NCBI GenBank assembly: GCA_002269645.1
Contig: NIVC01000462.1
Coordinates: forward strand, 339,516 to 403,515
Length of the DNA: 64,000 nucleotides
Source: Macrostomum lignano
Taxonomy: Eukaryota
Direction of reading: 5' to 3'
The notes beneath the pieces were generated by a model. It was not told the origin of the DNA. It worked only from the letters and a program-made list of their open reading frames with translations, and did not search any database. The translations under genes and the position numbers were made by a program. Below are positions 2,318-55,321 of this stretch, in pieces. Positions within the stretch are counted from its first letter, which is position 1. Every line of letters begins with the position of its first letter.

Positions 2318-4884
2318 CTAGTCGAATACACAAGCCCTGAAGACAATATTCACGGAGACATGACAATAACTGCCCCATACCCCTGCATCACCTGCATCTC
2401 CATTGTTATTGTTGGCTGCTCCGGCGGCTCCGCCAGCTTCCACATCGCTAGCGCAGCCTCCGTCAACATCCCCGGTGACGAAGCCGCAGGCTGAGCAGGC
2501 CTCAGTGTAGCTGGGCCGCAGGTACAGGCACACAAGGAGAGCCACGGCAGCTCCGATGAGGCCACCGCCAAGCACGTCGCTCCAGTGATGCTTGTAGTCG
2601 CTAACCCGGCTGGCGCACACGGCCAGGCCCCACACCAGCACAAATGACTGCAGCAGCCATTTCACTGCGTGACCCTTGGCAAACGTGAATCTGGACTGCA
2701 TGTACAGCGCGGCGAACAGCGTCATGTAGATGCTGTGCGACGAGTGACCGGATGGGAAGGACAGCATGGCCTCTCTGAACTGTTTTGAGTCGACCGGATG
2801 GCACACCGACGGCGACAGAGGCTGGTGAGAGGCGCAGGCTGTGAGGTACTCAGGCGAGCTCGTGTTGGCGCGGCACACAGCCAGGAAGTGCGGCCGGTGA
2901 CGCCCGATGATGGTCTTGACAGTCACCGTGACCACCTGGGTAAGGGCGAGTGCGAGTGTTGTTGCTGTGAATTGTGTCTTTGACTGTGAATTGTGTCTTT
3001 GACTGTGAATTGTGTGTGTCTTTGACTGTGAATTGTGTGTCTTTGACTGTGAATTGTGTGTCTTTGACTGTGAATGGTGTGTGTCTTTGACTGTGAATTG
3101 TGTCTTTGACTGTGAATTGTGTGTGTCTTTGACTGTGAATTGTGTGTCTTTGACTGTGAATTGTGTGTCTTTGACTGTGAATGGTGTGTGTCTTTGACTG
3201 TGAATTGTGTGTCTTTGACTGTGAATTGTGACTTTGACTGTGAATTATGTGTGTCTTTGACTGTGAATTGTGTGACTTTGACTGTGAATTGTGTGTGTCT
3301 TTGACTGTGAATTGTGTGTGTCTTTGACTGTGAATTGTGTGTCTTTGACTGTGAATGGTGTGTGTCTTTGACTGTGAATTGTGTCTTTGACTGTGAATTG
3401 TGTGTGTCTTTGACTGTGAATTGTGTGTCTTTGACTGTGAATTGTGTGTCTTTGACTGTGAATGGTGTGTGTCTTTGACTGTGAATTGTGTGTCTTTGAC
3501 TGTGAATTGTGACTTTGACTGTGAATTATGTGTGTCTTTGACTGTGAATTGTGTGACTTTGACTGTGAATTGTGTGTGTCTTTGACTGTGAATTGTGTGT
3601 GTCTTTGACTGTGAATTGTGTGACTTTGACTGTGAATTGTGTGTCTTTGACTGTGAATTGTGTCTTTGACTGTGAATTGTGTGTGTCTTTGACTGTGAAT
3701 TGTGTGTCCTTGACTGTGAATTATGTGTGTCTTTGACTGTGAATTGTGTGTCTTTGACTGTGAATTATGTGTGTCTTTGACTGTGAATTGTGACTATGTG
3801 AATTGTGAATTAGACACACAGTCAAAGTGAATTGTGTGTGTTTTTGACTGTGAATTGTGTGTGTCTTTGACTGTGAATTGTGTCTTTGACTGTGAATTGT
3901 GTGTCTTTGACTGTGAATTATGTGTGTCTTTGACTGTGAATTGTGTGTGTCTTTGACTGTGAATTGTGTGTGTCTTTGACTGTGAATTGTGTGTGTCTTT
4001 GACTGTGAATTATGTGTGTCTTTGACTGTGAATTATGTGTCTTTGACTGTGAATTATGTGTGTCTTTGACTGTGAATTGTGTGTGTCTTTGACTGTGAAT
4101 TGTGTGTGTCTTTGACTGTGAATTGTGTGTGTCTTTGACTGTGAATTATGTGTGTCTTTGACTGTGAATTATGTGTCTTTGACTGTGAATTATGTGTGTC
4201 TTTGACTGTGAATTGTGTGTGTCTTTGACTGTGAATTGTGTGTGTCTTTGACTGTGAATTGTGTGTGTCTTTGACTGTGAATTGTGTGTGTCTTTGACTG
4301 TGAATTATGTGTGTCTTTGACTGTGAATTGTGTGTGTCTTTGACTGTGAATTGTGTGTGTCTTTGACTGTGAATTGTGTGTGTCTTTGACTGTGAATTAT
4401 GTGTGTCTTTGACTGTGAATTGTCTTTGACTGTGACTTGACTTTGACTGTGACTTGTTCAGACAGGCTATAAACAACCAACGAACCTCCGTGATGAGGGT
4501 GCCTAAGGCGGCCAACAGCAGGCCCCTGAAGATGGCCACAGTGGCTCGAGTACAACGGGACTCCGGCTTGAGCCCGCAGCTGCCCAGACAGTTAGCATAG
4601 GTCCGATCCGACTCGCTAGCCCTACAGTTGCTGCGCATAGCGTGCCGGACAATCTCTATGATTACTACTGTCAGTAGGATGATAGCAGCGCCAACCACTG
4701 CCGCTACAATTATGGTGACAGTGTCCGGCTTGTACGGATAGCTGATGCTCTCGTCGTTGCAAAAGAAATGACGCTGAAACGGCTGCACGCCGAAATGGAA
4801 AATGCAGACATAGGCGCCAAGGATGATGATGACGGAGACTGCGGTGAGCAGGTTGGCAATCTCACTGCCAGGCAGGCAGCCCAT
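2318..4884 (-). CDS. PLPP: Phospholipid phosphatase (PAP2/LPP, wunen/PLPP-like); exons 4884-4486 and 2935-2318 (3' end may instead splice on, see next feature)
   Basis: Exon 1 has FQRHFFCNDESISYPYKPDTV and TM segments and ends GAG|GTTCG (phase 0). Exon 2 starts after CCCAG| and has all three PAP2 catalytic motifs: KTIIGRHRP, PSGH, SRVSDYKHHWSDV. Joined length about 338 aa. The exact paralog cannot be assigned. Confidence 0.93.
2962..4452. repeat. 19-23-bp minisatellite (TGTGAATTG(TG)nTCTTTGAC) filling the PLPP intron
   Basis: Read directly; occupies nearly all of intron 2936-4485. Confidence 0.97.
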
Positions 4885-6317: not shown

Positions 6318-7030
6318 TGTGTCCGTAGAGTGAGTGTCCATAGGGTGAGTGTCCGTAGGGTGAGTAACCGTAGGTTGAGTGTCCATAGGATGAGTGTCCA
6401 TAGGGTGAGTGTCCGTAGGGTGAGTGTCAATAGGGTGAGTGTCCGTAGAGTCCATAGGGTGAGTGTCCATAAGGTGAGTGTCCTTAGGACGAGTGTCCAT
6501 AGGGTGAGTGTCCATAAGGTGAGTGTCCTTAGGACGAGTGTCCCTAGGGCGTGTCCGTAGGGTGAGTGTCAATAGGGTGAGTGTCAATAGGGTGAGTGTC
6601 CATAGGGTGAGTGTCCGTAGGATGAGTGTCCATAGGGCGGGTGTCCATAGGGTTGAGTGTCCATAGGGTGAGTGTCCATAGGGTGAGTGTCCATAGGGTG
6701 AGTGTCCATAGGGTGAGTGTCCGTAGGGTGAGTCCGTAGGGTGAGTGTCCATAGGGTGAGTGTCCATAGGGTGAGTGTCCGTAGGGTGAGTCCGTAGGGT
6801 GAGTGTCCATAGGGTGAGTGTCCATAGGGTGTGTCCATAGGGTGAGTGTCCATAGGGTGAGTGTCCATAGGGTGAGTGTCCATAGGGTGAGTGTCCATAG
6901 GGTGAGTGTCCGTAGGGTGAGTGTCCGTAGGGTGAGTCCGTAGGGTGAGTCTCCATAGGGCGTGTCCATAGGGTGAGTGTCCGTAGGGTGAGTCTCCATA
7001 GGATGAGTATCCATACGGTGTGTCCACAGG
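6318..7030. repeat. 15-bp minisatellite (GGGTGAGTGTCCATA) with deletion variants
   Basis: Read directly; source of the DTHPM/HSPYG periodic ORFs. Confidence 0.95.
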
Positions 7031-7186
7031 GTGATTGTCTCCTAAATTAAGAGACGGACATCAGGCATCTAAACCTCAGTCATACGCTCGTAGAATAAGC
7101 TTCAGATAATGAGAATCTGAATTACCGATGAGCTTCAGTCAAATGAAAACAGATAAGATGATTAGCTTCATTATAAACAAAATTAG

Positions 7187-9094
7187 TTAATTAAATCCAG
7201 CCACAGATACAGCAGCAGCTTGGGCCTTTATTGCAGGGCCATTCTGGTCACGCCTGTGGTAACTGCGAGACTTCCAGTTCCCATTGGGGTAGAAGTGACG
7301 ACCGTCCTTGGGGTAGCGGCCAGACGATTGATGATGCTGAGACTTCTCGTGACGCCTCTGAGGCAAGTCTTTGCTCTCCGGCCTGGGACTGCCGTTCTGA
7401 CTGGCTTCAGGCTGCAAACTCTCATGCCCGTTGCTGCTCTGTTGCGGCCCAGCTGCACTCTCGGCGTGTTCTCGGTTTGGTTGGTTGCGCTGCCGATTGG
7501 CATTGCGATTGTTCTGGCGTCGCTGCTGTTGATTGCCGCTTTGATCCTGCCGCGGCTGTAAAGAGTCGCTTTGATCCTGCCGCGGCGGTAAATGATCCTT
7601 TTGATCTCGCCGCCGACGAGAATCACTTTGCTGATCTTGCTGATGCATCTGATTAACGCTTTGATCTTGCCGCTGTAAAGAATCACTTTGATGTTGCTGA
7701 TACTTTTGATTAGCGCTTTGGTCTTTCCGCCGACGAGAATCAGTTTGATCTTGCCGCCGCAGATAATCGCTTTGATCTTGCCGCCGACGAGAATCGCTTT
7801 GATCCTGCCGCGGCTGTAAAGAGTCACTTTGATCCTGCCACGTCTGTAAAGAGTCGCTTTGATCCTGCCGCGGCGGTAAATGATCCTTTTGATCTCGCCG
7901 CCGACGAGAATCACTTTGCTGATCTTGCTTATGCATCTGATTAACGCTTTGATCTTGCCGCTGTATAGAATCACCTTGATGTTGCTGATACTTTTGATTA
8001 GCGCTTTGGTCTTTCCGCCGACGAGAATCAGTTTGATCTTGCCGCCGCAGAAAATCGCTTTGATCTTGCCGCCGACGAGAATCACTTTGATCTTGGCGCC
8101 GCAGAGAATCGCTTTGATCTTGCCTGTGATAAGTGCTTTGCTCTTGCCGCCACTGACTGTCGCTTTGATGTTGCCGCCATTGTTGATTCGACCATTGGTT
8201 TTGCCACCATTGATAAGGTCGTTGATCTTGCCAATTTCGATAAGTACCTTGATACTGTCTGTATTGACGATTGCCTTGATCTTGCCACCGCCTATGGTTA
8301 CCACTTTGATGCTGTTGCCCGTTGCTAGAGCTTTGATCTTGACGCACCTGTTTGGCACTTTGATTATGTCGCCCCTGGTTAGCGCTTTGATCTTTCCGCC
8401 CCTGGTTGGCACTTTGACCTTGCCGCTCCTGGTTAGAGCTTTGATCTTGCCGCTCCTGGTTAGAGCTTTGATCTTGCCGCTCGTCAGCAACTGGTAACTC
8501 TGCTGGTTCAGGGCGAACACCTTGCGCAAGGCCGACAGGCTCAACAGCAGCTGGAGTAGCATTCGCTGAGCAGCCCTTCTTATCTTCATCAGCCACAATG
8601 GGTTCGCAGACGAAGTCTCCGCTATCAGAGTCGAATCCCACCCGGCACTGGCGGCAGACCGGGCAGGCAACGACAAGCTGCGGTAGGCTGCGACAGTGCG
8701 GGTCGCTGGCCAGAATCTCTCGAACTTGGCGCTGGTGCTCCGACTGGCGATGCCGGACAAAATGGCGCAGACAGTCCGCGTGGAAGTAGTGGTAGCAGTC
8801 CGTTACCAGCAGGCCAGCCTCGGTGTCGAATGACTCAAGACAGATTGAGCACTGCTCATCTGGCAGATGCTGCTGAGTCAGCGAATCCTTCACCAGCTGA
8901 AGCGGTTGGTCATGGGAAGAGGTAGTGGATAGACAGACAGGGTGACAGATAGACACTGAGACACTATAAGACAGACACTAATAGACACACTAAGGACAGG
9001 CAGACAAACAGACAGGTGGACAGACAGACAGACAGACAGACAGAAAGACAGACAAACACTAAGACAGACCAGACAGAAACACAGACAGACAGAA

Positions 9095-9182
<88 letters not shown>

Positions 9183-9897
9183 GGACAGACAGACAGACAG
9201 ACCCGCTCACCTCAACCAGATGCATAAGCATGAAGTCGCCCCTCAGCTGCTCTGCCTCGGCCCTCACGGTGGCCAGCAGATGCTCCAGCCGCTCTTCTAC
9301 CAGGCCTCGAGGGCACCGCAGATCAACCTGCGGCGGTTCGTCAGGATAGCCAGGTGGGCAGGTGGCCACCAGGCTGACGCTGATGAACTGCTTGCTCTGT
9401 ACGTCGGCTGTTGCTGGGCGAATGTCCACCGTGATGATGGTGGTACCATTGGGGTTGCTAGAGACGAGGGTTGGACAATAGGAATAATGCACGATAGTAA
9501 GCTGTGATCAATGCATACCTTTTGTTATTATCAATATCAATGGGTGAGTAGATGGGTAGGCAGATAAGTAGGTAAGTAGGTAGGTAGGTAGGTAGGTAGG
9601 TAGGTAGGTAGGTAGGTAGGTAGGTAGGTAGGTAGGTAGGTAGGTAGGTAGGTAGGTAGTAAGTAGGTAGGTAGGTTTTAGGTAGAAAAGCTTGATTAAT
9701 TTTTAGATAAATAAATATATATTACATGCTCATATTTATTTGGTTAATACGAGTAGAGTATATTTTAGCTTTAAAAAATAGCAATGCTTGTTTATAAATA
9801 AAGGGATCTTAAACTGAGAAACAGGAACCACTTACCTGGAAATGTCTTTTAATTCTTTGCAATAAATTTCTTTAAGAATAATTATTTCTTCCTCCAT
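7187..9897 (-). CDS. RNF25: E3 ubiquitin ligase RNF25/AO7 (RWD + RING-H2) with a long Q/R/D/S-rich repetitive tail; exons 9897-9836, 9457-9211, 8896-7187; about 672 aa
   Basis: Spliced frame MEEEIIILKEIY...IRPATADVQSKQFISVSLVATCPPGYPDEPPQVDLRCPRGL...LVE|LVKDSLTQQHLPDEQCSICLESF...TDCYHYFHADCL...CPVCR matches the RNF25 pattern recalled from knowledge (HPATA, YPxExP, PRGL, CxICL, CYHYFH). Canonical sites AG|GTAAG, TAG|C, GAG|GTGAG and CAG|CTG, with matching phases 2 and 0. Confidence 0.92.
8930..9200. repeat. (GACA)n microsatellite in RNF25 intron 2
   Basis: Read directly. Confidence 0.97.
9565..9676. repeat. (GGTA)n microsatellite in RNF25 intron 1
   Basis: Read directly. Confidence 0.97.
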
Positions 9898-19963: not shown

Positions 19964-19990
19964 TGGCGGCGGCGGCGGCTAAGATCAAAG
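19964..19990. promoter_or_regulatory. Candidate Wnt-response element: Helper site plus TCF/LEF site upstream of Axin
   Basis: TGGCGGC (reverse complement of GCCGCCA) at 19964-19970, within a GGC run, lies next to AGATCAAAG at 19982-19990. Confidence 0.5.
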
Positions 19991-20208
19991 AGCTTTTGCT
20001 TCACCCCTCCCAGCACGCAACCTCAACTCCAGAAAAGGCCCGGCCGTGCCGGGGGGGTGACTTGTGATCTTGGATTGGGACCGCCCCCTGCGCCAGCCAC
20101 AAGCAACTCGCTGTGTCAGAATTATTCTCTTTCAAGCCTGCCTGCCCCCCGTTCAAACCGGGGTTTATAACTCGCTAAAGTGAATACTTATTACACATCT
20201 CGGCCTAG

Positions 20209-20523
20209 CCAATGGGACTGGCCAATCCAGCCAATCGGTGATGAGCCACCCCTCTACCCCTCCCAAACATGGGGGACAAGCGCACACTCACGTCAAAACC
20301 CACCACCCCATTTCCCTCCAGGCGCACGCAATACTCGGGCACATTTGCACGCAAAGCGGAGGGTGGTGGGGAGAGAGAGTGGGGAATGGTGGCCGCCCAA
20401 GGGGGTTGGCCCGACCTTAAAGAGCTAAAAAGACGTATATATAAATTTTTTAACTTCGCGTCGCTACCACAACGATACGAACCGCAAATCAGAGTTGCTA
20501 TAGGCCTGCAATTTTTATAAAAG
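20209..20523 (+). promoter_or_regulatory. Probable Axin core promoter: three CCAAT boxes and a TATA box
   Basis: CCAAT at 20209, 20222 and 20231; TATAAAAG at 20516-20523; about 400 bp upstream of the ATG|GTAAG first exon. Confidence 0.5.
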
Positions 20524-23900: not shown

Positions 23901-26900
23901 GGCGCAAGCTATGCCTTTTTGCTAGCTGGCTTGGTTAGCTCTGGCTGTATTAGTCTCTGTTGTTTTTTTGAAGAGTGGAGCTCTATATTACTTACTTATG
24001 CTATATATATATATACCGTGTAGTCGGGGCAGCACAGAGGGAATTATCAATATCAGCCGCACAGGCACCCACTCTGTCTCTCTCTCTCTCTCTCTTGATT
24101 GCGAGTGAAGCCGCCGCCACCCTCACCTCTCACTCTATAGAGCCCTAAGTAGTACCCCACCTCGCTCTCTCCCCTCCCCTCTCTCTCCTCTCTCTCATCT
24201 TCAAAGCCACCGCCGGCTGGCGGCGGTTTTGGGGTGGATCATTTCCGCCTGTCTATTTATTTGACCCGCTCTCGTATATATGCCAGCTTAGAGCTGTTGT
24301 GTGTGTGTGTCTGTGCTCTAGCTGTGCGATCTAGCTTACTACTACCTACCTACTTACTTGTTTAGCGTTAGGCCATATATAATACGTACCCCCTCCCTCC
24401 CTCCTGCTGAGCCCCAACTCAACTTCATCTCCATCACTGCCAGCTTCTCTACTCTACTCTCCTAGACAGGCCTCAAATACGCACTGACACTCGCTTACCT
24501 TAACCTCCTTCTTTGCGATTTTGCCGCCGCTGCCGCAGTCTACGCCTTTGTTCTCATAGAAGATTAAGCATTGAGCGTGTATAGAATGGGGGTTGCCTTA
24601 ATAGAGAGGTAATATATAACTTATACTTTATAGGTTTGCTCAATTCCAGCTATGGCTTATTAAGTTTCTGTCTGAGTAGTTCAGCATCCTCTGCCCCATC
24701 AATTATTTATTTAGGCTACCTAATTCTACTAAACCATAAAGTTGGTCACAGAATCGCAGACAGACAGATGCCGACAAAAGCTGAGCATTGTAGTTTCCTG
24801 TTGAATGGTGTTAGCTTTAACATTTGTTATGTACTTTAAGCTATGGGTGCATTGGGACTTTAGAGGTTGGGAATCTATTGGTGGGATGGGAGATTCTTGC
24901 GCTTGCGGTTGGGAATCTATGCGTGGGATGGGAGATTCTTGAGGTTGGGAATCTATGGGGATGAAAGATTTATGAGGTTGGGAATCTATGGGTGGGATGG
25001 GAGATTCTTGAGGTTGGGAATCTATGGGTGGGATGGGAGATTCTTGAGGTTAGGAATCTATGGGTGGGATGGGAGATTCTTGAGGTTGGGAATCTATGGG
25101 TGGGATGGGAGATTTTCGAGGTTAGGAATCTATGGGTGGGATGGGAGTTTCTTGAGGTTAGGAATCTATGGGTGGGATGGGAGATTTTCGAGGTTAGGAA
25201 TCTATGGGTGGGATGGGAGATTCTTGAGGTTGGGAATCTCTGGGTGGGATAGGATATTCTTGAGGTTGGGAATCTCTGGGTGGGATAGGATATTCTTGAG
25301 GTTGGGAATCTATAAAAGGGATGGGAGATTCTAGAAATTAGAAATCTATGGGTGGGATGGTATTCAATAATCCAGCACTCTAAATAATTCCCTTATTCTC
25401 TCAATCCCATCCCAGACCGCCACAGAGCTCTGCTGTCAACAGCAGTCTCCGGTGAGTCTCACGACTACAGGTGACTCGACAGCTTCGCCAGCCATCGGCC
25501 AGCAGCAGCAGCAGCAACAACAGCAGCAGCAGCTTCAAGATGCCAGTCAGCAACAGTCCTTGAAGTCCCAGCAGAAACATCAGCAGCTGTACATGCTAGC
25601 CGCAGCAGCAGCAGCCGCTGCAGCTGCTTCAACTTCTGACATCCCAGAAGAGGACGACAGCGCGTCATTGACAGCAACGGCCGCCGCGGCAACTGCAGGC
25701 GCCGACGAGCCCGACTTCGCCTCCAACATTGATGGCGTGTCCTCGGCTCCAGTCGGCGTTGACGTCTGGCCGGAAGGCCTTCGCAACCTGCTGGAGGACG
25801 CTGAAGCTGTGCTCACCTTTCGCAACTACCTAGAGGAGGCTTGCGACCCTGCGGCAGCTAGGGCTTTCGATTTCTACTTTGCTGTCAAGGGACTGAAGTC
25901 TGGCCAGCTGCAGATGGAGCAGTCAGCTGGGGACGCTGGCACTTCCAGGTGAGCATTCGGGGTGTTTTTGGATGGATAGGGTTGACTGTATCACCGGGAA
26001 ACTCTATAGAATCGATGGGAGATTCTACAGAATCGATAGGAGATTCTACAGAATCGATAGGAGATATTACAAAATCGATGGGAGATTCTACAGAATCGAT
26101 GGGAGATTCTACAGAATCGATGGAGATTCTACAGAATCGATGGAGATTCTACAGAATCGATAGGAGATCCTACAGAATCGATGGGAGATATTACAGAATC
26201 GATGGGAATCTAGTCATAAATAATCTATTTCCACCAAAAACTCCCTGCCAGACGCTGTCCAAAGCTGATTCGCCTCATCGCCAAGCGGTACATCCTGTCC
26301 GAGGACTCCGCAGTCCCTGTCATTAGCAGCGCCACTCGGCAAGCTGTGCAGTCCAGCTTGCGCTCCGGCTCGCCCGCCGACGCCACCATATTCGACTCGG
26401 CGCTGGCCGAAGCTGCCAGCTACCTGGCCGACACCGCCTATCCGGCTTTCCTGCGCTCGGACAGGTGGCTCGGCTGCGCTGATCGCCTGCCGACTTTGCA
26501 CGAGGATCGCGAGCTGCTGCTCAAAGCTCACGGCTTGCTGCAACAGCAGCAGCAGCAGCAAGGAGGTCCTGTGCTGGTGGGACTGACCAGAGACAACCTG
26601 CTGGCTACGAGGCATCACCGGGGTCGAGGTGGAGGCTCTGACCGACTGATGCCCGCTGGGTGAGTATTTTTGTCTCTCCTGTTACGTTTAGGGGTCTTTA
26701 ATATGTCTAACTAGCTTTTTACCCTTCTTGCGACTTCTACAACAGCGAGAATTTCTATCTTTGGCTTCTGAAGCAGTTCCGAGTTTAGCAATGGAATGGA
26801 AGCATCTATTCTGTTGTCCTTTGCTTGGCTCTTTGACCCAAAACCAACCTCGTGGCCACGCATGGTCCAGCCTTCTGGGGCCGCTGCTGGGAGGGCGGAA

Positions 26901-29900
26901 CCCCCCTGCGCACCCAGCTGTGCTTTCTCAACTGCGCATACGGCTGCTGCGGATTCTCTCTCCCACCCCTTCTAGGCCTGCCGAATTTGGCATTCCTCTC
27001 TGCTGCCTCTTCTCTTCCCTTCTACCAGTCACTTTTTTCTCCTATGTCTTCCCCTGTTTCTCTATCCTATCCCTATACCCAAAGCCCTGCTGCAAAGTGC
27101 GCACACTCGGTGACCCCGGCCGGGCCTCGCACCCAAAATCCGCTGGCTGATCTACTGCTGCTTTATCTCCCTCTTCCCCAAGCGCTTAGGCCGCTTGGAC
27201 TCCGTAATTTGAATTGGGATTCGGGATTCCGCGCTGGGTAGGAGGGGGTGTACTGTTAGGAAGACAGCTCGGTAGAGTTTGCGATCCAACTTTTTATGAT
27301 TATTATTATTGTTGTTGTTTGCAACATTCGAACACAGCCATTCCAAATATGCATGACCTCGTCTATAGTTTTTAGTATCACCGAGAGTCTTAGCTTCCAT
27401 AAAAGGGGGAACAAATGCACTGAAAACGAAGCAGAAAAAATTGGAAAGGTTGAACGTGTTTAAGTGTAAACTGTAAGCATAACTGATCACCTTGCTGCTT
27501 TCGGTTTCCAAGTCTAAAATGGCCTGTATCGGCTTTTACATCACTAGACTTGAACATCTGGGCAGGGAAACTGTTCGGGCCGATTCTTGGAGCTCCAAAC
27601 ACTGTGATATCAGGATCCAGGATGTAGGCAGACTGTTCAGGCCGAGCCGTGGAGGCTCCAGAGACGGTGATATCAGGATCCAGGATGTAGGCAGACTGTT
27701 CAGGCCGAGCCGTAGAGCTCCAGAGACGGTGATATCAGGATCCAGGATGTAGGGAAACTGTTCAGGCCGATTCTTGAAGCTCCAGGCACTGATATCAGGA
27801 TCCAGGATGTAGGGAAACTGTTCAGGCCGATTCTTGAAGCTCCAGACACTGATATCAGGATCCAGGATGTAGGGAAACTGTTCAGGCCGATTCTTGAAGC
27901 TCCAGGCACTGATATCAGGATCCAGGATGTAGGGAAACTGTTCAGGCCGATTCTTGAAGCTCCAGACACTGTGATATCAGGATCCAGGATGTAGGGAAAC
28001 TGTTCAGGCCGATTCTTGAAGCTCCAGACACTGATATCAGGATCCAGGATGTAGGGAAACTGTTCAGGCCGATTCTTGAAGCTCCAGAGACTGTGATATC
28101 AGGGCCCAGGATGTAGGGAAACTGTTCAGGTCGAGCCTAGAAGCTCCAGGCACTGTGATATCAGGATCCAGGATGTAGGGAAACTGTTCAGGCCGATTCT
28201 TGAAGCTCCAGACACTGTGATATCAGGATCCAGGATGTAGGGAAACTGTTCAGGCCGATTCTTGAAGCTCCAGACACTGATATCAGGATCCAGGATGTAG
28301 GGAAACTGTTCAGGCCGATTCTTGAAGCTCCAGAGACTGTGATATCAGGGCCCAGGATGTAGGGAAACTGTTCAGGTCGAGCCTAGAAGCTCCAGGCACT
28401 GTGATATCAGGATCCAGGATGTAGGGAAACTGTTCAGGCCGATTCTTGAAGCTCCAGACACTGATATCAGGATCCAGGATGTAGGGAAACTGTTCAGGCC
28501 GATTCTTGAAGCTCCAGGCACTGTGATATCAGGATCCAGGATGTAGGGAAACTGTTCAGGCCGATTCTTGGAGCTCCAGAGACAGTAATATCAGGATCCA
28601 GGATCCAGGATGTAGGGAAACTTTTCAGGCCGAGGCCGAGCCGTGGAGCTCCAGACACTGTGATATCAGGATCCAGGATGTAGGGATATCAGGCTACATA
28701 ATCTAACCGGCAGGCAGGTAAAATAAATTTAGACCTGGTTAAGCTACCAGTTCCCAATCGAAACCGGGGTTGCAGGCCAACAATACCAGCGTAAAAGCAG
28801 CGGAACAGGAAAGAAGCATGAGAGAAAGTTACGTAGATGATGCGCGGGTTGGGGATGCTGAATTCCTTTGATGCCAGGCCGGTGCCTCCGGCTGCAGGCT
28901 GCTGCATGACCCGCTGCATCCGTTTCGCTACAAACTGTGGATTGGGCTGTTACAAGTGAAACACAGAATTTATATTTTCTCTCCCTGCTGCGCTGCCGTG
29001 TGCTGCCTGCCTTCGCTGCCTCTCCATCCGGGATATAGACACAATATCAAAATCATTTTTTCATTTCCTTTTTTTCATTTCGCTTTGCGCATACGACTAT
29101 GGACTCGGGCCCTCTCTCTCCTCTCCCTTCCGGGATCTGTTTGCTTTTGCCTTTGCTTGTTGAGCAGCCACCCCCCCGCCGGGATCTCCAGGTGAGTGAC
29201 TTGCCCCGCCCACTCTGGCCTCGATATTCCGCCTCGCTCTCTCTCTAGTCTGGAGTGTTAGTCGCTCTCAAAAATCTCCACTTGAGCTGTGTTGAGCATG
29301 CAAAGCGGGGAGAAAGCAACCCTAGGGCGAGTCTCAAGTTTCTCTCTTGCCCTCTTGTCCCACCCGTGTCTTCCAAACCTTTCTCAGTCTGGGCTTGAAC
29401 TAACTGAGCTCTCAACTCTTCTTCAGGGCGACCCGTTCTCCCTCCGCACCTTTCTCCAACCCCCCCCCCACCCAGCCAGCTGTTTGCTCTCGGGCCTTCG
29501 CCTCTACAAATAAATGAATAGAAGATTGATAGATATTGGTTGCGATTATACACATCCCCCATCCCTAGCTGCCTTTGTTGACTCTCTAATGGGGGCGACG
29601 GAGAATATTGGGCGTCGTCAGATCCCCAGCGTTCGGAATTTCTCTCCTATTCACCTTGTTTGCTGACAGCTCCGGAGAAATTCGCTAAATATCCTGTTGC
29701 TCCACCTCCCATCTGCCTGTCCTGTGTTCGATGTGTTATCATGCATATGCCTGTCCCAGCAGCTGCTTCCTGTTCAACAGCAATTCCCGACATCTGCCGC
29801 CCGGTTGATTACGTAATCTGAGATAGATTTGGCCCTGAATTTTCTATAGTTTTTGCGTGCATGTCGGTCTGCTTTTTGTGTCTCGTATTTCTGTCTGCTG

Positions 29901-32900
29901 ACGGCTGTGGCAAACTTATGAATTTGTGACGCCAGATGTGGATCATCATCTGATGCTCATGATGATGGGATCTAGGATCTGGGATCTGGGATCTGAGATC
30001 TAGGATCTGGGATCTAGGATCTGGGATCTAGGATCTGGGATCTAGGATCTGGGATCTAGGATCTGGGATCTAGGATCTGGGATCTAGGATCTGGGATCTA
30101 GGATCTGGGATCTAGGATCTGGGATCTAGGATCTGGGATCTAGGATCTGGGATCTAGGATCTGGGATCTAGGATCTGGGATCTAGGATCTGGGATCTAGG
30201 ATCTGGGATCTAGGATCTGGGATCTAGGATCTGGGATCTAGGATCTGGGATCTAGGATCTGGGATCTAGGATCTGGGATCTAGGATCTGGGATCTAGGAT
30301 CTGGGATCTGGGATCTAGGATCTGGGATCTAGGATCTGGGATCTAGGATCTGGGATCTAGGATCTGGGATCTAGGATCTGGGATCTAGGATCTGGGATCT
30401 AGGATCTGGGATCTAGGATCTGGGATCTAGGATCTGGGATCTAGGATCTGGGATCTAGGATCCGGGATCTAGGATCTGGGATCTAGGATCTGGGATCTAG
30501 GATCTGGGATCTAGGATCTGGGATCTAGGATCTGGGATCTAGGATCTGGGATCTAGGATCTGGGATCTAGGATCTGGGATCTAGGATCTGGGATCTAGGA
30601 TCTGGGATCTAGGATCTGGGATCTAGGATCTGGGATCTAGGATCTGGGATCTAGGATCTGGGATCTAGGATCTGGGATCTAGGATCTGGGATCTAGGATC
30701 TGGGATCTAGGATCTGGGATCTAGGATCTGGGATCTAGGATCTGGGATCTAGGATCTGGGATCTAGGATCTGGGATCTAGGATCTGGGATCTAGGATCTA
30801 GGATCTGGGATCTAGGATCTGGGATCTGGGATCTAGGATCTGGGATCTGGGATCTAGGATCTGGGATCTAGGATCTGGGATCTGGGATCTAGGATCTGGG
30901 ATCTAGGATCTGGGATCTAGGATCTAGGATCTGGGATCTAGGATCTGGGATCTAGGATCTGGGATCTGGGATCTAGGATCTGGGATCTAGGATCTGGGAT
31001 CTAGGATCTAGGATCTGGGATCTAGGATCTGGGATCTAGGATCTGGGATCTAGGATCTGGGATCTAGGATCCGGGATCTAGGATCTGGGATCTAGGATCT
31101 GGGATCTAGGATCTGGGATCTAGGATCTGGGATCTAGGATCTGGGATCTAGGATCTAGGATCTGGGATCTGGGATCTACTATCCGTAAGTCTGAAGACTA
31201 CCGATATTCAAAGCTTAGTACTTTAATAGTTCAGTTAAAAACTTTTTTTCTGATTAAAGTTTCAAAAGATCTTGTGTGCTAGTAAAAAACCGGAAGCATT
31301 CAAAGTCGTGCTGTGCTTGCTTTGAGGAGAGCTTCCAAGACTTGGACTTGTCGCTATCAGTTTGTTGGTTATAAATCTCTGCACTACCGCTTCTAATCCA
31401 GCCACTTCCCCCTCCCTCTCCCCTCTCTTCTTTATCCTTTCTCCTCTCCATCACTGGGTCATAAAATCCCTCTCAGTGTGTTGGCAGTGCAGTCCAGCAC
31501 TGTGCGTGTGTGTGTGTGTGTGTGTCGTTTCAGTTCGAGATTGCATAGCTGCATAGGGTATGAAAGGCTGGGGTTCCCTATAGGCCTGTTGGCCAGTAAA
31601 ATCTTCCTTAGGATGCATACTGCCTCCATGCGTAGCAGCCCTTCCAGTGCTGCTACTACTGCTGCTGTGTATGCATAGCGTACAGTAGGCTCTTAATCTC
31701 CTGTTTGCGGCAGATATTATATGTTAGATTTTGTAACATGTCTTTACTATTGCTCTTAAACATAGACTGCTCACTTCCTGATCCATAGACTGCTCACTCC
31801 CTGATCCATAGACTGCTCACTCCCTGATCCATAGACTGCTCACTCCCTGATCTATAGACTGCTCACTCCCTGATCTATAGACTGCTCACTCCCTGATCCA
31901 TAGACTGCTCACTCTCTGATCCATAGACTGCTCACTCCCTGATCCATAGACTGCTCACTCCCTGACCCATACACTGCTCACTCCCTGAGCCATAGACTGC
32001 TCACTCCCTGACCCATAGACTGCTCACTCCCTGATCCATAGACTGCTCACTCCCTGATCTATAGACTGCTCACTCCCTGACCCATAGACTACTCACTCCT
32101 TGACCCATAGACTGCTCATGACCCATAGTCTGCTCACTCCTTGACCCATAGACTGCTCACTCCCTGACCCATAGTCTGCTCACTCCCTGACCCATAGTCT
32201 GCTCACTCCCTGACCCATAGTCTGCTCACTTCCTGACCCATAGTCTGCTCACTTCCTGACCCATAGACTGCTCACTCCCTGACCCATAGTCTGCTCACTC
32301 CTTGACCCATAGACTGCTCACTCCCTGACCCATAGTCTGCTCACTCCTTGACCCATAGACTGCTCACTCCCTGACCCATAGTCTGCTCACTCCTTGACCC
32401 ATAGACTGCTCACTTCCTGACCCATAGACTGCTCACTCCTTGACCCATAGACTGCTCACTCCCTGACCCATACACTGCTCACTCCCTGACTCATAGACTG
32501 CACACTCCCTGACCTATCTTCTCGATTGACCCATTTCACTGCTACCAAAGCATTCATACAGAACAGACTTATTGTAACTTTTTAGTCTCAAAAGCAGTTC
32601 TCCATCCCGAGACAGAACTCTGCTTTCCAGCCAAGAGTTGTAAATAAAAAAGTGGGGAAAAATTAAGCCAGAGCTTCCTCTTCCCATTTTTTGCAAAATC
32701 CCTCAAAACTCGAGTCACGCACGGGAACTTCGAAGGAGTTTCGAAGAACGGATTCTATAATTATGGCAATAAATTTAAAAGATTATTAATTCTCATTCTC
32801 CAAGCAGCCCAAAGCGCAAGCATTAATAATAATTTGAGCACCCGCTGTGCTCGAGTGGGACAAAAATGGGTGGAGCAGGAAGAGCTCAAGATTACGTAAT

Positions 32901-35613
32901 CAATTGAAGCCAGCTCTCCAGCTGTGAGCCCGGCCTACCTCTAGCCAAAAAACACTGAGACTGGTTTTTGTAAGATTTAGAAATTCCTTCGTATTCAGTC
33001 TGTTTATTGCTATTATTATTTTTATTTCTCAATAATGAAATCGTGCCGTAAATCCGTGACTGTAGGATTTTTATGGCGAACTCGAATTAATATTGCGCTC
33101 GCAAGACGACTCGGTTCTCAATCTTTTTACGATACGAAACCCCCCCCCCGAATTCCCATTTATCTCGGTATCACATCCGTATCGGGTCTGGGCATTGGGG
33201 ATCAAATCCTGCACCAGGGCTGGTCACATTTCACAGTTTGCCCCTGTCAGGCTGGGAAGCTGGGAGCTCCCCAGGGGGAGAGGGAGGGTGGTTTACGATG
33301 AAATTGTGTAGGGTGGGAAGGGAGATTTTAGTGCAGGGAGGGCCGCACATACTGGGAACTTACGGCTTAATTCCCCCCCACCACCCTTCTCTAAAATTCT
33401 TTTTACAACCGAATGAACCTCGGCAGCAGCTCAAAGTTTGAGCAGGGCGATAATAAATTTGTGAACTGCCCTGAGCTTACGAGCGCGTTCACCTTAAAAA
33501 CCATAGGCAAAATAAAATTTGGGCAATAAGCTGCTCAGGGCTTGCTTTTATTTCATTAATGACGCCTATTACAGTTGTTTAGCTGCTAGCACCACCCGAG
33601 CTCAGCCTGTTGGTGAAACTATTATTATTGTTATTATTATTATATCCACCCCCAGCTCTGAAGGGGATTAATGCCCGCGCGTGTTGTGCTGCACAGTTTT
33701 ATAATGCATCATTTTATAGGCTTGTTAATAGCTCAGGGGGGGGGCAGGGCAGGGCTCCAGAGAGCGCGGTGAGCTCTCTCGCGACTACTGCGGCTTGCAA
33801 TATTGGGCTGGGGGCACTCCTTTTATGAGCCGCATCCACCTCTCCCTACCCCCTCTCTCCCCGGTGCGCTTGTAAGCCAATTTTACAATGCTCATTTGGT
33901 CTTTTACTGCTCCTGACTGCAGCTCTGCTACTGCTGCTGCTGCTGCTGCTGCCACCACCAAGGGAAGACGGGGAGAGGTGGGGGCTATACTGCTGCTGAC
34001 CAGTTCAATTCTCCCCTTGCTATAACCCTCCTCCTCCTCCTCTTCCACTGGCTGAGCCGCCGGCTTTTGTGTATATATACACACACCAGATAGATAAGCA
34101 TGGCTATGTAAGGCCAGCAGAGAACTTGTGGGGCTTACATGTTCTGTAACTCTCTCTAGTGACAGTCTGACAGGCTGACAGGACAAGCCACTAAATTCAT
34201 CATTTAGCTCTCCACCTTGTCCAACCTCGCAGGCCATCCTGCTGCACCAGCATGAGCCAGGCCCTGCCTTACTACACCTCCTATGCGCCTGGAAGCCGTC
34301 GCGACTCCGAGCTTCAGTCGTTGCAGTCCTCCGACGCCCTGACTGACGTCGACAATCTGTCCCTGACTGACACGGCCAGCAGTCTGGACGCGGCCAGCTA
34401 CCGGCAACATCATCATCATCACCAGGCTCCGGGCAGTCGCAAAGGCCTCCGCCGGGCGATGCGGTGCGCCGCCTCCGCCAACCGGGACGACCTCGCCAGC
34501 AATGGCGGCGGCAGCGGCGCCAGTAGCAGTTGCCGGCAGCAGCTCCTGCTCAGGCACCAGCTGCAGCAGCACGCCGCCAGCTGCCAGTACGACCGCGACC
34601 TGCCAGTCACCAATCCGGACAAGTTCGCCCGCCTACTGGCCGACCGTCTGCAGTGCCACCAGCGCGAGCAGACCCTGACATCCCGGCCGCCGAGCAGTCT
34701 GTCCTGCGGCAGCGGCGCCGAGCTGCTCAATTCGCCCTGGGCTCAGCGAATCCTTCGAGCCAGCATGAGCAGCCGCGACAGCAACCCGGAGGACATCCTC
34801 ACCGACCACCTGGACCACCTGGATCGGGGCCACTCGTCTCATCCGCAGCCGCTGGCGCCCCCTCCGCCTCAGCAGCTTCCTTCCAGCCAGCCTCCTCCGC
34901 TTCAGCAACAGCTGCATCAAAAGCTTGAAGCATCGGAGCTGGACCAGGAGACTCACGTGCACCATTATCACTATTATCACCACTTCCGCGCCAGCGGCAG
35001 CGGCGCAACCAACAGCTTGATCTGCGGCGGCGCCGGAGCGGCCTCCACAGCGGGTGACAGCGGCTTCGGCACCATCTCCTCCTCTAGTCGATACGGCGGC
35101 ATTCTTCGCTCCTCGTCAGCCACAGCGGCCGCGGCTTCGGTGGCTTCCACTTCAACTGGCGGCTCTGTGCACCGTCAGCAGTTAACGCAGCACGTGTCCA
35201 ATCAGCTTGCCGCTGCCGCCCGTTGTGACCAGCCCCGCCAGCCCTTCATGATCGACAGCAACATGCCCGTGATGGACAAGCCCAACCCCGACACCACCAT
35301 TGTGGAGGCCCGACGTCGTTTAGAAGAGGTCAGCCTGCAGCAGCAGCCACCGCCGCAGCAGCAGCCGCTGACCATCGGCTACTTCCTGTGCGGAGACTCT
35401 GTGCCGTACAGGCACGCGTGGCCGGGCCAGAGCATCACCCTCGGCCAATTCAAGCAGCTCATGGCCAAGAAGGGCAGCTATCGGTATTTCTTCAAGCGGC
35501 GATGCGACGAGTTTGTGGTCGGCGGCGCCGTGCACGAGGAGGTGACGGACGACTCTGAGGTGCTGCCGCTGTGGGAGGGCAAAGTCATCGGCAGGGTGGA
35601 GCGAGTTGAGTAG
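20927..35613 (+). CDS. Axin: Axin; exons 20927-20929 (ATG only), 25416-25948, 26252-26659, 34233-35613; 774 aa (782 with the candidate microexon)
   Basis: RGS domain split across exons 2/3 (WPEGLRNLLED...FYFAVKGLK...KLIRLIAKRYI...AYPAFLRSD). Also LPTLHE, PYYTSYAPGSRRDSELQSL, GSK3-binding NPDKFARLLADRL, beta-catenin-binding NPEDILTDHL, a His tract and a C-terminal DIX (YFLCGDSVPY...YRYFFK...LPLWEGKVIGRVERVE*). All junctions are GT-AG with matching phases (0, 2, 2); total 2325 nt. The first exon is less certain than the rest. Confidence 0.95.
24200..24224. promoter_or_regulatory. Candidate TCF + Helper pair in Axin intron 1
   Basis: TTCAAAG at 24200-24206 followed by TGGCGGC at 24218-24224; another GCCGCCA lies near 24113. 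Confidence 0.4.
24866..25360. repeat. 36-bp G-rich minisatellite (GGGTGGGATGGGAGATTCTTGAGGTTGGGAATCTAT) in Axin intron 1
   Basis: Read directly; 12-aa periodic ORFs. Confidence 0.95.
26003..26207. repeat. 21-bp minisatellite (GATGGGAGATTCTACAGAATC) in Axin intron 2
   Basis: Read directly. Confidence 0.95.
27562..28690. repeat. 60-62-bp minisatellite (GATATCAGGATCCAGGATGTAGGGAAACTGTTCAGGCCGATTCTTGAAGCTCCAGACACT) in Axin intron 3
   Basis: Read directly; 20-aa periodic ORF; variant units recur as higher-order blocks. Confidence 0.95.
29168..29191 (+). CDS. Axin: Candidate 24-nt (or 27-nt) Axin microexon encoding (G)HPPAGISR
   Basis: Long pyrimidine tract, then tandem GAG|CAG| acceptors and a consensus CCAG|GTGAGT donor. 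Phase 2-2, identical to the host intron, with no stop codon. Confidence 0.55.
29967..31178. repeat. 14-bp dimeric satellite of alternating GGATCTA/GGATCTG heptamers
   Basis: Read directly. Confidence 0.97.
31761..32513. repeat. 23-bp minisatellite (CCATAGACTGCTCACTCCCTGAT/C)
   Basis: Read directly; variants change gradually from GATCC to GACCC along the array. Confidence 0.95.
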
Positions 35614-39272: not shown

Positions 39273-39894
39273 CATAGTAGCTTTTATCGCCCTCTCGTAG
39301 CGTCCCAGCAAGCAACCACTATAGTTTCGTTTCCCTTTATCAGTTTTGTCACCCTTAACCGCCTTTACCCAACGCCCCGAATCTCTTTGAAGTTGCCGCC
39401 GCGTTTGCTAAATTTATGCGCTGCATGGTGAACTATAGTGTAGTCTCCACCGTCCTTTGTCGCGCGCTCCGTCTCCTATCCAATTCCTGTTAGATAGTGT
39501 TGCAAGACAACCTATAATAAGCTGCTTAAAATGCATTCCTCTGTGAAGGCCTTGAATGACTTCGGCACCGATTCTAAATATGGCTCGTAAATCGAGCAAA
39601 CTGAACCAAGTGTTACATGTACGTTGTTGCACTTGCTGCGAAAGCTGCACACACAGTCCCAATACCCAAGCTTGGTTGGTAACAAGGAAATCTGTCTTTA
39701 CTCTTTCCATCAGTTTTTTTGGCAGTCACGATATTTTGTGTCACAAGTACATGCTGTCCTGTTTTGGACTGCTTAGTAGACTGTGAGAAGAGGGAGATTG
39801 GGAGAGAAGCATGGAGATAAAGAAAGAAGAGAGGAGAGGATGGGAGAGAGAAAGAGAGAGGGAGAGAGGTCCAGAAGAGAAGGAGACAGTGAGA

Positions 39895-42160: not shown

Positions 42161-42176
42161 GGGAGAAAGGAATAGA

Positions 42177-54650: not shown

Positions 54651-55321
54651 GATGCTGCAGTATATTAGATGAATCGCAAAGTACCAGTAATTAATATTTA
54701 GTCGATAAAGTTAAATGGGAAGGTGAATTGACGCAAGTAAGTAGCGATGTACTGTAGCAGTCCAGGTAGCAAAGCTGGACTGGTCTAGGCCTGTACCGTG
54801 AAGATACTAGTGTGTACTGCAAGCAATTACTATAAGCTAATCAGTTGAAAGAGTGATATTCCGAAAGCCTGTTGGACCCCAATGAGAGACAATTTCTGTA
54901 TCAGTCGGAACAACTTCATGCTGGCTGTTGCAGCTGCGGTAGATAACTTATCACCTCTGCTTTTCTCTAGCCACTCTTTCTTGGCCTTTGCCGATTGTGT
55001 ATGTCAGGCTTTATAGCCGCTTTGGAAACGTTAATGTACCGTAAATGCACGTCCATTCCTTGAACATGTGTCTGGATGTCAATTAAAGCAAGACTAGAGC
55101 GAGAAAATCTCCGAAGCGTATATAAGAAAAGATTTTTCTATAACTCTTCTGCTTCGGCAAAACTAAAACTGCTTTTCTTCGCGGGTGACACTAAAGGTTC
55201 GTTCTGTTGATTTTCAATCTTCTTTTTGCAAAGGTTTTTTCAAGTCATTGTCCCATGTTGTTGCTGACTTGAGTCATTTAATTCTAAACAAAGATATCTT
55301 TTTGAGAAGCATAGAATGACT

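What the first reader, a model, noticed from the sequence alone, without database searches (positions are those of the whole stretch)
7539..8480. RNF25 coding repeat doubles as a dense TCF/LEF(+Helper) site array about 12 kb from the Axin promoter: possible exonic Wnt enhancer
Seen: the RQDQS repeat (CGG CAA GAT CAA AGC) reads GCTTTGATCTTGCCGCC on the + strand. I count 19 exact CTTTGAT cores in about 930 bp (e.g. 7539, 7569, 7659, 7770, 7857, 8058, 8163, 8439, 8466). Many are followed within 2-3 bp by GCCGC(C); 8163 has a perfect GCCGCCA. Known: SCTTTGATS is the TCF HMG site, GCCGCCR is the C-clamp Helper site, and Axin genes are common Wnt feedback targets. Inference: this exon could work like a natural TOPflash/TH multimer for the neighbouring Axin and/or RNF25. 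Caveat: the copies come from tandem duplication, so they are not independent evidence of selection.
Basis: partly seen in the sequence, partly recalled or inferred. Interest (0 to 1): 0.72.

Follow-up and report, generated by a model that had tools for sequence, protein, structure and literature searches.

The report
TCF-site array inside RNF25 coding repeat
A young tandem repeat that encodes the disordered tail of an RNF25-like ubiquitin ligase happens to spell near-ideal TCF (Wnt) binding sites on the opposite strand; nothing found here shows this is more than a by-product of repeat amplification, but only a bench test can rule out enhancer activity.

Summary
There are exactly 19 CTTTGAT cores on the + strand between 7539 and 8472. 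Ten are perfect 11-bp HMG sites. [quoted passage not shown]

The gene names also hold. The repeat lies in the last exon of an RWD+RING (RNF25-like) gene on the minus strand. An RGS+DIX (Axin) gene lies downstream on the + strand.

The enhancer reading has no support beyond the motif match:
- All 19 cores are one codon string (xAT CAA AGy = D/H/N-Q-S) copied by tandem duplication, including a 277-bp duplication that is 96% identical.
- The 11 differences between those two copies fall inside the TCF footprints at least as often as chance predicts.
- The synonymous sites that the core depends on are not significantly more conserved than neighbouring ones.
- 28% of the window is minisatellite, and 6.5% of all 7-mers occur at least 19 times.
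- No protein among 1.84 billion representatives carries this repeat, so no orthologue test was possible.

Most likely this is a lineage-specific coding minisatellite whose TCF sites are incidental. Separately, three single-copy bipartite TCF-like sites flank Axin; these are more conventional candidates for Wnt feedback.

The parts
7535..8482 (-). Coding tandem repeat: about 34 units of 21-36 nt encoding R-Q-D-Q-S-x-x-x-x. On the + strand it reads GCTTTGATCTTGCCGCC and carries all 19 CTTTGAT cores.
   Evidence: TRF periods of 27, 30, 54, 57 and 288. Unit table. Unit lengths are 27 (x17), 30 (x11), 21, 24 and 36, all multiples of 3. Every core is in one frame.
7535..7811 (-). Higher-order repeat, copy A (277 bp)
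   Evidence: Period 288, 96.0% identical to copy B, 11 differences.
7823..8099 (-). Higher-order repeat, copy B (277 bp)
   Evidence: pN/pS is 0.43, not different from 1 (p=0.23).
7769..7786 (+). Perfect bipartite TCF-type site: GCTTTGATCTT + GCCGCCG (HMG and Helper, spacing 0). It is the reverse complement of CGG CGG CAA GAT CAA AGC (RRQDQS).
   Evidence: site definitions from PMC4154663.
8057..8074 (+). Perfect bipartite site, the higher-order-repeat duplicate of 7769-7786
8162..8179 (+). Perfect bipartite site: GCTTTGATGTT + GCCGCCA
7187..8896 (-). RNF25-like last exon: RING finger, repeat and C-terminal tail; stop codon TAA at 7187-7189
   Evidence: ORF. RING families in Pfam. Splice model. 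Solved structure of the RNF25 RING, 5d1k, 6e-12.
9211..9457 (-). RNF25-like exon 2 (RWD domain)
   Evidence: Pfam RWD 1.6e-11. Solved RNF25 RWD structure 2dmf, 1e-15. Splice sites read, model built.
9836..9897 (-). RNF25-like exon 1, with the start codon at 9897
   Evidence: the inferred model gives an uninterrupted 672-aa product.
25452..35613 (+). Axin gene: RGS domain encoded by 25452-25948 plus 26252-26663, DIX domain in 34252-35613
   Evidence: The nearest relatives retrieved are flatworm Axins.

Best explanation
The feature is a lineage-specific coding minisatellite in the last exon of an RNF25-like (RWD + RING) E3 ligase gene. A founder unit, CGG CAA GAT CAA AGC + 4-5 codons (R-Q-D-Q-S-x-x-x-x), was amplified by unequal exchange or slippage to about 34 in-frame units. 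The most recent step was a 277-bp block duplication. The product is a polar, charged, presumably disordered tail: 88% of its residues are R/Q/D/S/N/K/E/H/G/P/T.

Read on the other strand, the founder codons spell GCTTTGATCTT GCCGCC, which matches the HMG + Helper site of C-clamp TCFs. Amplification copied that string along with the codons. The dense 'TCF array' is therefore a by-product of coding-repeat expansion and is not maintained for transcription-factor binding.

Shown here: the motif match, the frame relationship, the duplication structure, the gene identities and the lack of detectable constraint on the sites. Inferred: the disorder and role of the tail, the amplification mechanism, and the absence of regulatory function. 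The isolated fragment would quite possibly respond to beta-catenin/TCF in a reporter assay, but that alone would not show a native role.
For: - All 19 cores sit in one codon frame, as [D/H/N]-Q-S.
- The perfect bipartite sites are the reverse complement of RRQDQS codons.
- Every unit length is a multiple of 3 despite several independent indels.
- TRF finds nested periods, including a 288-bp period at 96% identity.
- The two 277-bp copies differ at 11 positions. Seven lie inside the 18-bp TCF footprints (38% of positions, 4.2 expected), one destroys a core and several degrade Helpers.
- pN/pS is 0.43, p=0.23, so the peptide is only weakly constrained.
- Core-critical synonymous positions are not significantly more uniform than neighbouring ones. 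Codon 4 is CAG in 4/34 units against codon 2 in 7/26 (p=0.18). Pooled, the minority codons are 6/59 against 17/73, and these counts are not independent.
- The repeat's unusual codon use (GAT 84%, CAA 71%, CGG 64%, against 30%, 25% and 17% in the rest of the gene) extends to positions outside the core, as a founder effect predicts.
- Tandem arrays cover 28% of the window (24 arrays), and 6.5% of all 7-mers occur at least 19 times.
- No protein among 1.84 billion representatives matches the repeat; all 171 hits match the RING part, and no hit scored above 57 bits.
- Other RNF25 homologues carry unrelated tandem repeats of their own in the same tail, for example about 15 units of SRGQHHDRPS in the crinoid protein P0008.
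Against: - The unit matches an 18-bp bipartite consensus far better than a random unit would. I estimate a perfect FF0 pair at about 2e-9 per position under equal base frequencies. Three are present (two independent), plus ten near-perfect ones.
- The neighbouring gene is Axin, a Wnt-pathway component that is a feedback target in several animals.
- Axin is also flanked by three single-copy bipartite TCF-like sites (0.46 expected, P=0.011).
- Given the peptide, local codon use predicts 0.36 cores. Even shuffling the repeat's own synonymous codons gives only 7.8 +/- 1.9, against 19 observed. Common descent explains this, but selection is not excluded.
- Core-critical synonymous sites show a non-significant deficit of variants.
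- Two FF0 pairs suffice to drive Wnt-dependent reporters in fly cells and discs (PMC4154663).
Confidence: 0.8

Rival explanations
1. The exon doubles as a Wnt-responsive enhancer: TCF with its C-clamp occupies the array, recruits beta-catenin when Wnt is on, and raises transcription of Axin (about 12-17 kb away) and/or RNF25, giving negative feedback.
For: - There are 10 perfect HMG sites, 3 perfect pairs and 13 near-perfect pairs in the FF0 layout, one of the two layouts TCF/Pan binds most tightly.
- Synthetic reporters with only two such pairs are active.
- Axin is the next gene on that side. Its putative promoter region and flanks carry three further bipartite sites.
- Exonic enhancers are an accepted class (PMC3371700, PMC13216554).
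- There is a weak, non-significant deficit of variants at core-critical synonymous sites.
Against: - The copies share descent, so they amount to few independent events.
- Differences between the two 277-bp copies hit the footprints at or above the chance rate, and most Helpers carry a mismatch.
- The array lies inside a transcribed exon of a gene on the opposite strand, and that gene's own 5' end lies between the array and Axin.
- The repeat is absent from every RNF25 homologue that could be retrieved, so any such function would be recent.
- Natural modules do not look like this.
- Axin is not among the Wg targets named in the main text of a genome-wide fly study.
- The host's TCF and its C-clamp have not been seen.
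Confidence: 0.08
2. TCF binds the array in vivo but without an adaptive enhancer role. It could act as a neutral or mildly deleterious decoy or sink, or as a site where TCF/Groucho dampens RNF25 transcription. Its effect would scale with repeat copy number.
For: Predicted affinity is high and the copy number is high. No constraint on the sites was detected, which fits binding that is not under selection.
Against: No binding data exist. Gene-body chromatin of an expressed gene is usually a poor substrate for such factors (general knowledge). About twenty sites is small against the genome-wide pool of TCF sites.
Confidence: 0.08
3. The uniform GAT-CAA-AGC/CGG codons are held by something other than TCF, for example mRNA structure, an RNA-binding-protein site (GAUCAAAG), or codon-dependent translation speed in the repeat.
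For: One 288-nt repeat block folds more stably than shuffles do (z=-2.85; 2 of 200 shuffles fold as well). Codon use in the repeat is the reverse of that in the rest of the gene.
Against: The fold has no defined structure: the minimum-energy structure has ensemble frequency 0, and the centroid is -29 against -87 kcal/mol. Repeats with CGG/CCG runs pair trivially. No Rfam family matches. A founder effect explains the codon use more simply. No significant synonymous constraint was found.
Confidence: 0.04

Closest known systems
Synthetic TCF reporters: TOPflash-type HMG multimers and the HMG-Helper 'FF0' reporters of Archbold et al. 2014 (PMC4154663)
   Same: They are head-to-tail, same-orientation copies of high-affinity HMG sites (GCTTTGATCTT). 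In three units a GCCGCCR Helper abuts the HMG site, exactly the FF0 layout that gave the tightest binding and strong reporter activity.
   Different: This array is natural, lies inside a coding exon, and is spaced 27-30 bp by codons. Most of its Helpers carry a mismatch, there is no adjacent minimal promoter, and no activity has been measured.
Natural Wnt-responsive cis-regulatory modules of Drosophila (nkd-IntE, nkd-UpE, Notum, fd96C)
   Same: They use HMG + Helper pairs recognised by a TCF that has a C-clamp.
   Different: They are non-coding, with a handful of sites in mixed orientations and spacings, and are not tandem repeats. [quoted passage not shown] Their function was shown by mutagenesis; nothing comparable exists here.
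Exonic enhancers ('eExons'; Birnbaum et al. 2012, PMC3371700; PMC13216554)
   Same: They are coding exons proposed to regulate the host gene or a nearby gene.
   Different: They were defined by chromatin marks, factor occupancy and reporter assays, none of which is available here. They are generally not recent tandem repeats.
Lineage-specific coding tandem repeats in disordered protein tails, including the tails of other RNF25 homologues
   Same: They are in-frame units of 9-10 residues, polar and charged in composition, placed C-terminal to the RING, and evolve fast. The crinoid homologue P0008 has about 15 SRGQHHDRPS units, and P0021 has QRRSGG-type units.
   Different: The unit sequence is unrelated to those. 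Only here does the antisense reading match a known bipartite transcription-factor site.

Membership tests
Wnt-responsive cis-regulatory module (TCF/beta-catenin enhancer) | HMG-domain sites fitting SCTTTGWWSWW | tested here: met
   10 perfect 11-bp sites and 19 CTTTGAT cores.
Wnt-responsive cis-regulatory module (TCF/beta-catenin enhancer) | Helper (GCCGCCR) sites close to HMG sites in a productive layout | tested here: met
   3 perfect FF0 pairs, and 13 with at most 1 mismatch per half.
Wnt-responsive cis-regulatory module (TCF/beta-catenin enhancer) | Sites conserved or constrained beyond neutral expectation | tested here: inconclusive
   No orthologue with the repeat is available. Within the array, differences between the two 277-bp copies do not avoid the footprints, and the deficit of synonymous variants is not significant.
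Wnt-responsive cis-regulatory module (TCF/beta-catenin enhancer) | TCF/beta-catenin occupancy, and Wnt-dependent, site-dependent transcriptional activity | not testable with these tools
   Needs ChIP or CUT&RUN, ATAC-seq and reporter or genome-editing experiments.
Wnt-responsive cis-regulatory module (TCF/beta-catenin enhancer) | Host TCF carries a C-clamp (needed for the Helper sites to matter) | not testable with these tools
   The TCF gene is not in the window and the host species is unidentified. The literature says most invertebrate TCFs have a C-clamp. Flatworms have several TCF paralogues.
RNF25 (RWD + RING E3 ligase) | N-terminal RWD domain | tested here: met
   Pfam PF05773 1.6e-11. 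Best solved-structure matches are the RNF25 RWD domains 2dmf and 2day, 1e-15 and 1e-13.
RNF25 (RWD + RING E3 ligase) | RING finger following the RWD domain, with the TDCYHYFH motif | tested here: met
   Pfam RING families. Solved RNF25 RING structure 5d1k, 6e-12. Homologues named RNF25 align over this part. The motif was used as a search pattern.
Axin | N-terminal RGS domain and C-terminal DIX domain in one gene | tested here: met
   RGS: PF00615 2.9e-11, and solved Axin structure 1dk8 2e-10, on an inferred splice. DIX: PF00778 4.8e-27. Homologues are named Axin-1.
Coding minisatellite (in-frame tandem repeat) | Tandem units whose lengths stay multiples of 3 within an uninterrupted reading frame | tested here: met
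   33 spacings of 21, 24, 27, 30 or 36 nt. A 589-aa ORF runs through the array. Translation itself was not shown, as no RNA or protein data are available.

The most novel reading that the evidence does not exclude
A recently expanded coding minisatellite has been co-opted as a natural multimer of optimal bipartite TCF sites. On this reading it is an exonic, copy-number-tunable Wnt enhancer feeding back on the adjacent Axin gene (and/or RNF25), working alongside the single-copy TCF sites at Axin's putative promoter.
Probability: 0.07. Interest if true: 0.7.

Novelty: new member of a known kind. Interest (0 to 1): 0.3.

Why it matters
If the by-product reading holds, the case is mainly a caution. 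In a genome where more than a quarter of the sequence is tandem array, a dense cluster of any short motif is expected. Copy number is then not evidence of function, even when the motif fits an 18-bp bipartite consensus and the neighbouring gene suits the story.

If the enhancer reading were true, this would be a natural counterpart of TOPflash-type reporters inside a coding exon. It would be an example of regulatory sequence born through coding-repeat expansion, with repeat length as a possible dial on Wnt feedback. That would interest people working on Wnt transcription and on dual-use codons.

Tried and rejected
- Homologue search with the full 672-aa protein returned nothing, because low-complexity words filled the candidate list. 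The N-terminal 242 aa gave only two distant hits.
The exon-3 ORF is not on record.
- The exhaustive HMMER search of 1.84 billion representatives found only RING-level relatives of at most 57 bits. No close orthologue is therefore available, and the orthologue codon test could not be run.
- The metagenome scan found only distant RING matches.
- I checked synteny in Taenia solium. No RNF25 lies within 10 kb upstream of its Axin.
- By eye, codon 4 (CAA) looked invariant across units, which would hint at DNA-level constraint. When counted it is not: CAG occurs in 4/34 units, and the comparison with codon 2 gives p=0.18. I dropped the idea.
- The mRNA-structure explanation gave z=-2.85 but no defined fold, and Rfam finds nothing in the window. 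I rated it unlikely.
- I started by assuming the host was an insect, from the short introns, polyQ and GC3-rich codons. I withdrew this after the only Axin relatives retrieved were from flatworms. The species remains unidentified.
- Literature searches for a C-clamp in flatworm TCFs and for tapeworm Axin gave nothing decisive.

Full report
**1. The observation**

The region 7539-8472 contains exactly 19 CTTTGAT heptamers, all on the + strand. The other 63 kb contain 12. Dinucleotide-preserving shuffles of the window give 15.4 +/- 3.7 in total, against 31 observed. Eleven of the 19 cores are followed after three bases by GCCGC. The site at 8163 carries GCCGCCA, and those at 7770 and 8058 carry GCCGCCG.

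I then scored the region against the definitions used for Drosophila TCF/Pangolin by Archbold et al. 2014 (PMC4154663). The HMG site is SCTTTGWWSWW and the Helper is GCCGCCR. The two best-bound layouts are a Helper 6 bp upstream ('AK6') and a Helper immediately downstream ('FF0'). By these definitions the region holds:
- 10 perfect 11-bp HMG sites;
- 3 perfect FF0 pairs (7769-7786, 8057-8074, 8162-8179);
- 13 pairs with at most one mismatch in each half at spacing 0.

No perfect pair occurs elsewhere in the window.

**2. What the sequence is**

The repeat lies in a 589-codon ORF on the minus strand. With two upstream exons, whose splice sites I read from the sequence, I built a 672-aa model: 9897-9836, 9457-9211 and 8896-7187. 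The product has an RWD domain and a RING finger. The best solved-structure matches for both domains are human RNF25 (2dmf 1.2e-15, 5d1k 5.7e-12), and the homologues are named RNF25. The RNF25 assignment holds.

On the + strand an RGS domain is encoded by 25452-25948 plus 26252 onward (inferred splice). Pfam gives 2.9e-11, and the best solved-structure match is the Axin RGS domain 1dk8 at 2.2e-10. A DIX domain ends the ORF 34252-35613 (4.8e-27). The Axin assignment also holds.

About 12 kb from the array there are three CCAAT boxes (20209-20235) and TATATATAAA (20436-20445). It is only a consensus look-alike. The first recognisable Axin coding exon is 17 kb from the array.

**3. Anatomy of the repeat**

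Tandem Repeats Finder reports nested periods of 27, 30, 54, 57 and 288. Parsed in frame, there are about 34 units that start with R-Q-D-Q-S (CGG CAA GAT CAA AGC), followed by four or five variable residues. Unit lengths are 27 (x17), 30 (x11), 21 (x2), 36 (x2) and 24 (x1). All are multiples of three, which indicates that the reading frame has been kept.

All 19 cores fall in the same frame, as xAT CAA AGy, which is [D/H/N]-Q-S. The perfect FF0 pair is the reverse complement of CGG CGG CAA GAT CAA AGC, which is RRQDQS. The encoded tail is 27% Q, 15% R, 13.5% D and 13.5% S. Polar, charged or small residues make up 88% of it, so it is presumably disordered; this is an inference.

The most recent event is a 277-bp block duplication (7535-7811 and 7823-8099) at 96.0% identity.

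**4. Is there evidence that the sites, rather than the peptide or nothing, are maintained?**

(a) Codon statistics. If the peptide is recoded using the codon use of the non-repeat part of RNF25 plus the Axin exons, 0.36 +/- 0.59 cores are expected. Permuting the repeat's own synonymous codons gives 7.8 +/- 1.9. The observed number is 19. The repeat prefers GAT (84%), CAA (71%) and CGG (64%), whereas the rest of the gene prefers GAC, CAG and CGC. This looks striking, but it is exactly what amplification of one founder unit produces, and the bias also affects Q codons outside the core.

(b) Differences between the two 277-bp copies. There are 11. Seven lie within the 18-bp bipartite footprints, which cover 38% of positions, so 4.2 are expected. 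One destroys a core (7975), and several weaken an HMG flank or a Helper. The substitutions do not avoid the sites. pN/pS is 0.43 and is not distinguishable from 1 (p=0.23), so even the peptide is only weakly constrained.

(c) Synonymous sites across units. The two positions whose change would break the core (the third bases of codons 3 and 4) carry the minority codon in 6 of 59 cases. Codons 1, 2 and 5 carry it in 17 of 73. For the like-for-like comparison of CAA with CAG, codon 4 (4/34) does not differ from codon 2 (7/26): p=0.18, or p=0.21 after removing one of the two copies. Because the units share descent, the real number of events is smaller still. A first impression that codon 4 was invariant did not survive counting.

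(d) Orthologues. An exhaustive HMMER search of 1.84 billion representative proteins found 171 hits. All match the RING part, and no hit scored above 57 bits. None matches the repeat. Word-indexed searches and a metagenome scan agree.

Other RNF25 homologues have unrelated tandem repeats of their own in the same tail. Examples are about 15 units of SRGQHHDRPS in the crinoid protein P0008 and QRRSGG-type units in P0021. This tail appears prone to repeat expansion in general.

**5. Genomic background**

Twenty-four tandem arrays cover 28% of the window. They occur in both RNF25 introns and in the first Axin intron. In this window 531 of the 8192 strand-collapsed heptamers occur at least 19 times, and CTTTGAT ranks 241st. 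Multiplicity of a heptamer is therefore ordinary here.

What is not ordinary is that the unit fits an 18-bp bipartite consensus. By my estimate a perfect FF0 pair is expected at about 2e-9 per position under equal base frequencies. Against that must be set the number of arrays in such a genome, the number of known factor motifs, and the number of windows scanned. I cannot quantify this look-elsewhere correction exactly.

**6. Context that bears on the Axin idea**

Outside the array, 3 of 22 HMG-like sites have a Helper in a favoured position. Using the real sequence as the null, 0.46 are expected (P=0.011). All three flank Axin:
- 19973-19991 (minus strand): TCTTTGATCTT, one spacer base, then GCCGCCG within a GCC run. 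It lies about 450 bp upstream of the TATA/CCAAT region.
- 24197-24215 (minus strand): a perfect HMG site, GCTTTGAAGAT, with ACCGCCG one base away.
- 39384-39401 (+ strand): TCTTTGAAGTT followed by GCCGCCG.

This is a post hoc observation. If Axin is a TCF target in this animal, these single-copy sites are the conventional candidates, and the exon array is not needed to explain feedback.

On the literature side:
- Two FF0 pairs suffice for Wnt-dependent reporter activity in fly cells and discs.
- Axin is not among the Wg targets named in the main text of a genome-wide fly study.
- Exonic enhancers are an accepted class.

**7. The host**

The only Axin relatives I could retrieve are from flatworms: Taenia solium, T. 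asiatica and Protopolystoma. Their DIX domains are 60-69% identical to this one and share the C-terminal ending LPLWEGKV..VERVE. Neither RNF25 nor Axin has a close relative in the collections.

The host is thus a poorly sampled lineage. It may be a platyhelminth and is not demonstrably an insect. Most invertebrate TCFs have a C-clamp, and flatworms have several TCF paralogues. The host's TCF was not seen, so the relevance of the Helper half of the site is assumed. T. solium has no RNF25 within 10 kb upstream of its Axin.

**8. Verdict**

The array is real, and it is a very good sequence match to the optimal TCF/Pangolin site. Every property I could test is accounted for by amplification of a coding unit in a minisatellite-rich genome, and no test showed constraint on the sites.

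I put about 0.8 on 'incidental by-product'. I put about 0.08 on a genuine Wnt enhancer, about 0.08 on binding without an adaptive role, and about 0.04 on some other nucleotide-level constraint. The isolated fragment may well score positive in a reporter assay. Only occupancy data together with recoding in place would establish a native function.

Noticed in passing
window 19973-19991 (-), 24197-24215 (-), 39384-39401 (+): Three single-copy HMG+Helper pairs flank the Axin gene: TCTTTGATCTT-n-GCCGCCG in a GCC run; a perfect GCTTTGAAGAT with ACCGCCG one base away; and TCTTTGAAGTT+GCCGCCG. Of 22 HMG-like sites outside the array, 3 have a Helper, where 0.46 are expected (P=0.011). These are more conventional candidates for Wnt-responsive elements of Axin than the exon array.
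   Followed up: partly
window 20209-20235 and 20436-20445 (+): Three CCAAT boxes within 27 bp, and a TATATATAAA about 200 bp downstream. This is a promoter-like stretch about 5 kb upstream of the first recognisable Axin coding exon and about 450 bp downstream of the 19973-19991 TCF-like site. No transcript evidence is available.
   Followed up: no
whole window (e.g. 1084-1957, 2973-4437, 6319-7039, 27564-28686, 29966-31178, 36329-38174, 39843-42161, 45069-45962, 53066-54653): The window is saturated with minisatellites: 24 tandem arrays cover 28% of it. Unit lengths run from 4 to 62 bp and copy numbers up to about 180. Both RNF25 introns and the first Axin intron each contain an array.
   Followed up: partly
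window 25452-35613 (Axin); loci and proteins P0155-P0157, L008: The only Axin relatives retrieved are from flatworms (Taenia, Protopolystoma): the DIX domain is 60-69% identical and has the same C-terminal ending. Those Taenia proteins show no RGS domain in Pfam, whereas this Axin has one. The host is unidentified and may be a platyhelminth or another poorly sampled lineage.
   Followed up: partly
proteins P0008 (Antedon mediterranea) and P0021: Other RNF25 homologues carry independent, unrelated tandem repeats in the tail after the RING: about 15 units of SRGQHHDRPS in P0008 and QRRSGG-type units in P0021. Repeat expansion seems to recur in this tail.
   Followed up: no
window 2318-2935 and 4054-4884 (-), array 2973-4437: A PAP2-family (lipid phosphate phosphatase-like) gene lies downstream of RNF25 (Pfam 1.8e-24). 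The sequence between its two ORFs is a 23-mer array of about 66 copies that contains 63 CTTTGAC, a near-miss of the TCF core amplified in non-coding DNA.
   Followed up: no
window 7535-7822 (-): Folded as RNA, one repeat block is more stable than its shuffles (z=-2.85), but no dominant structure emerges. The likely cause is pairing between CGG and CCG codon runs.
   Followed up: partly
window 47222-47755 (-): A Q-rich 177-aa ORF with no Pfam match. It may be an exon of an unidentified gene.
   Followed up: no
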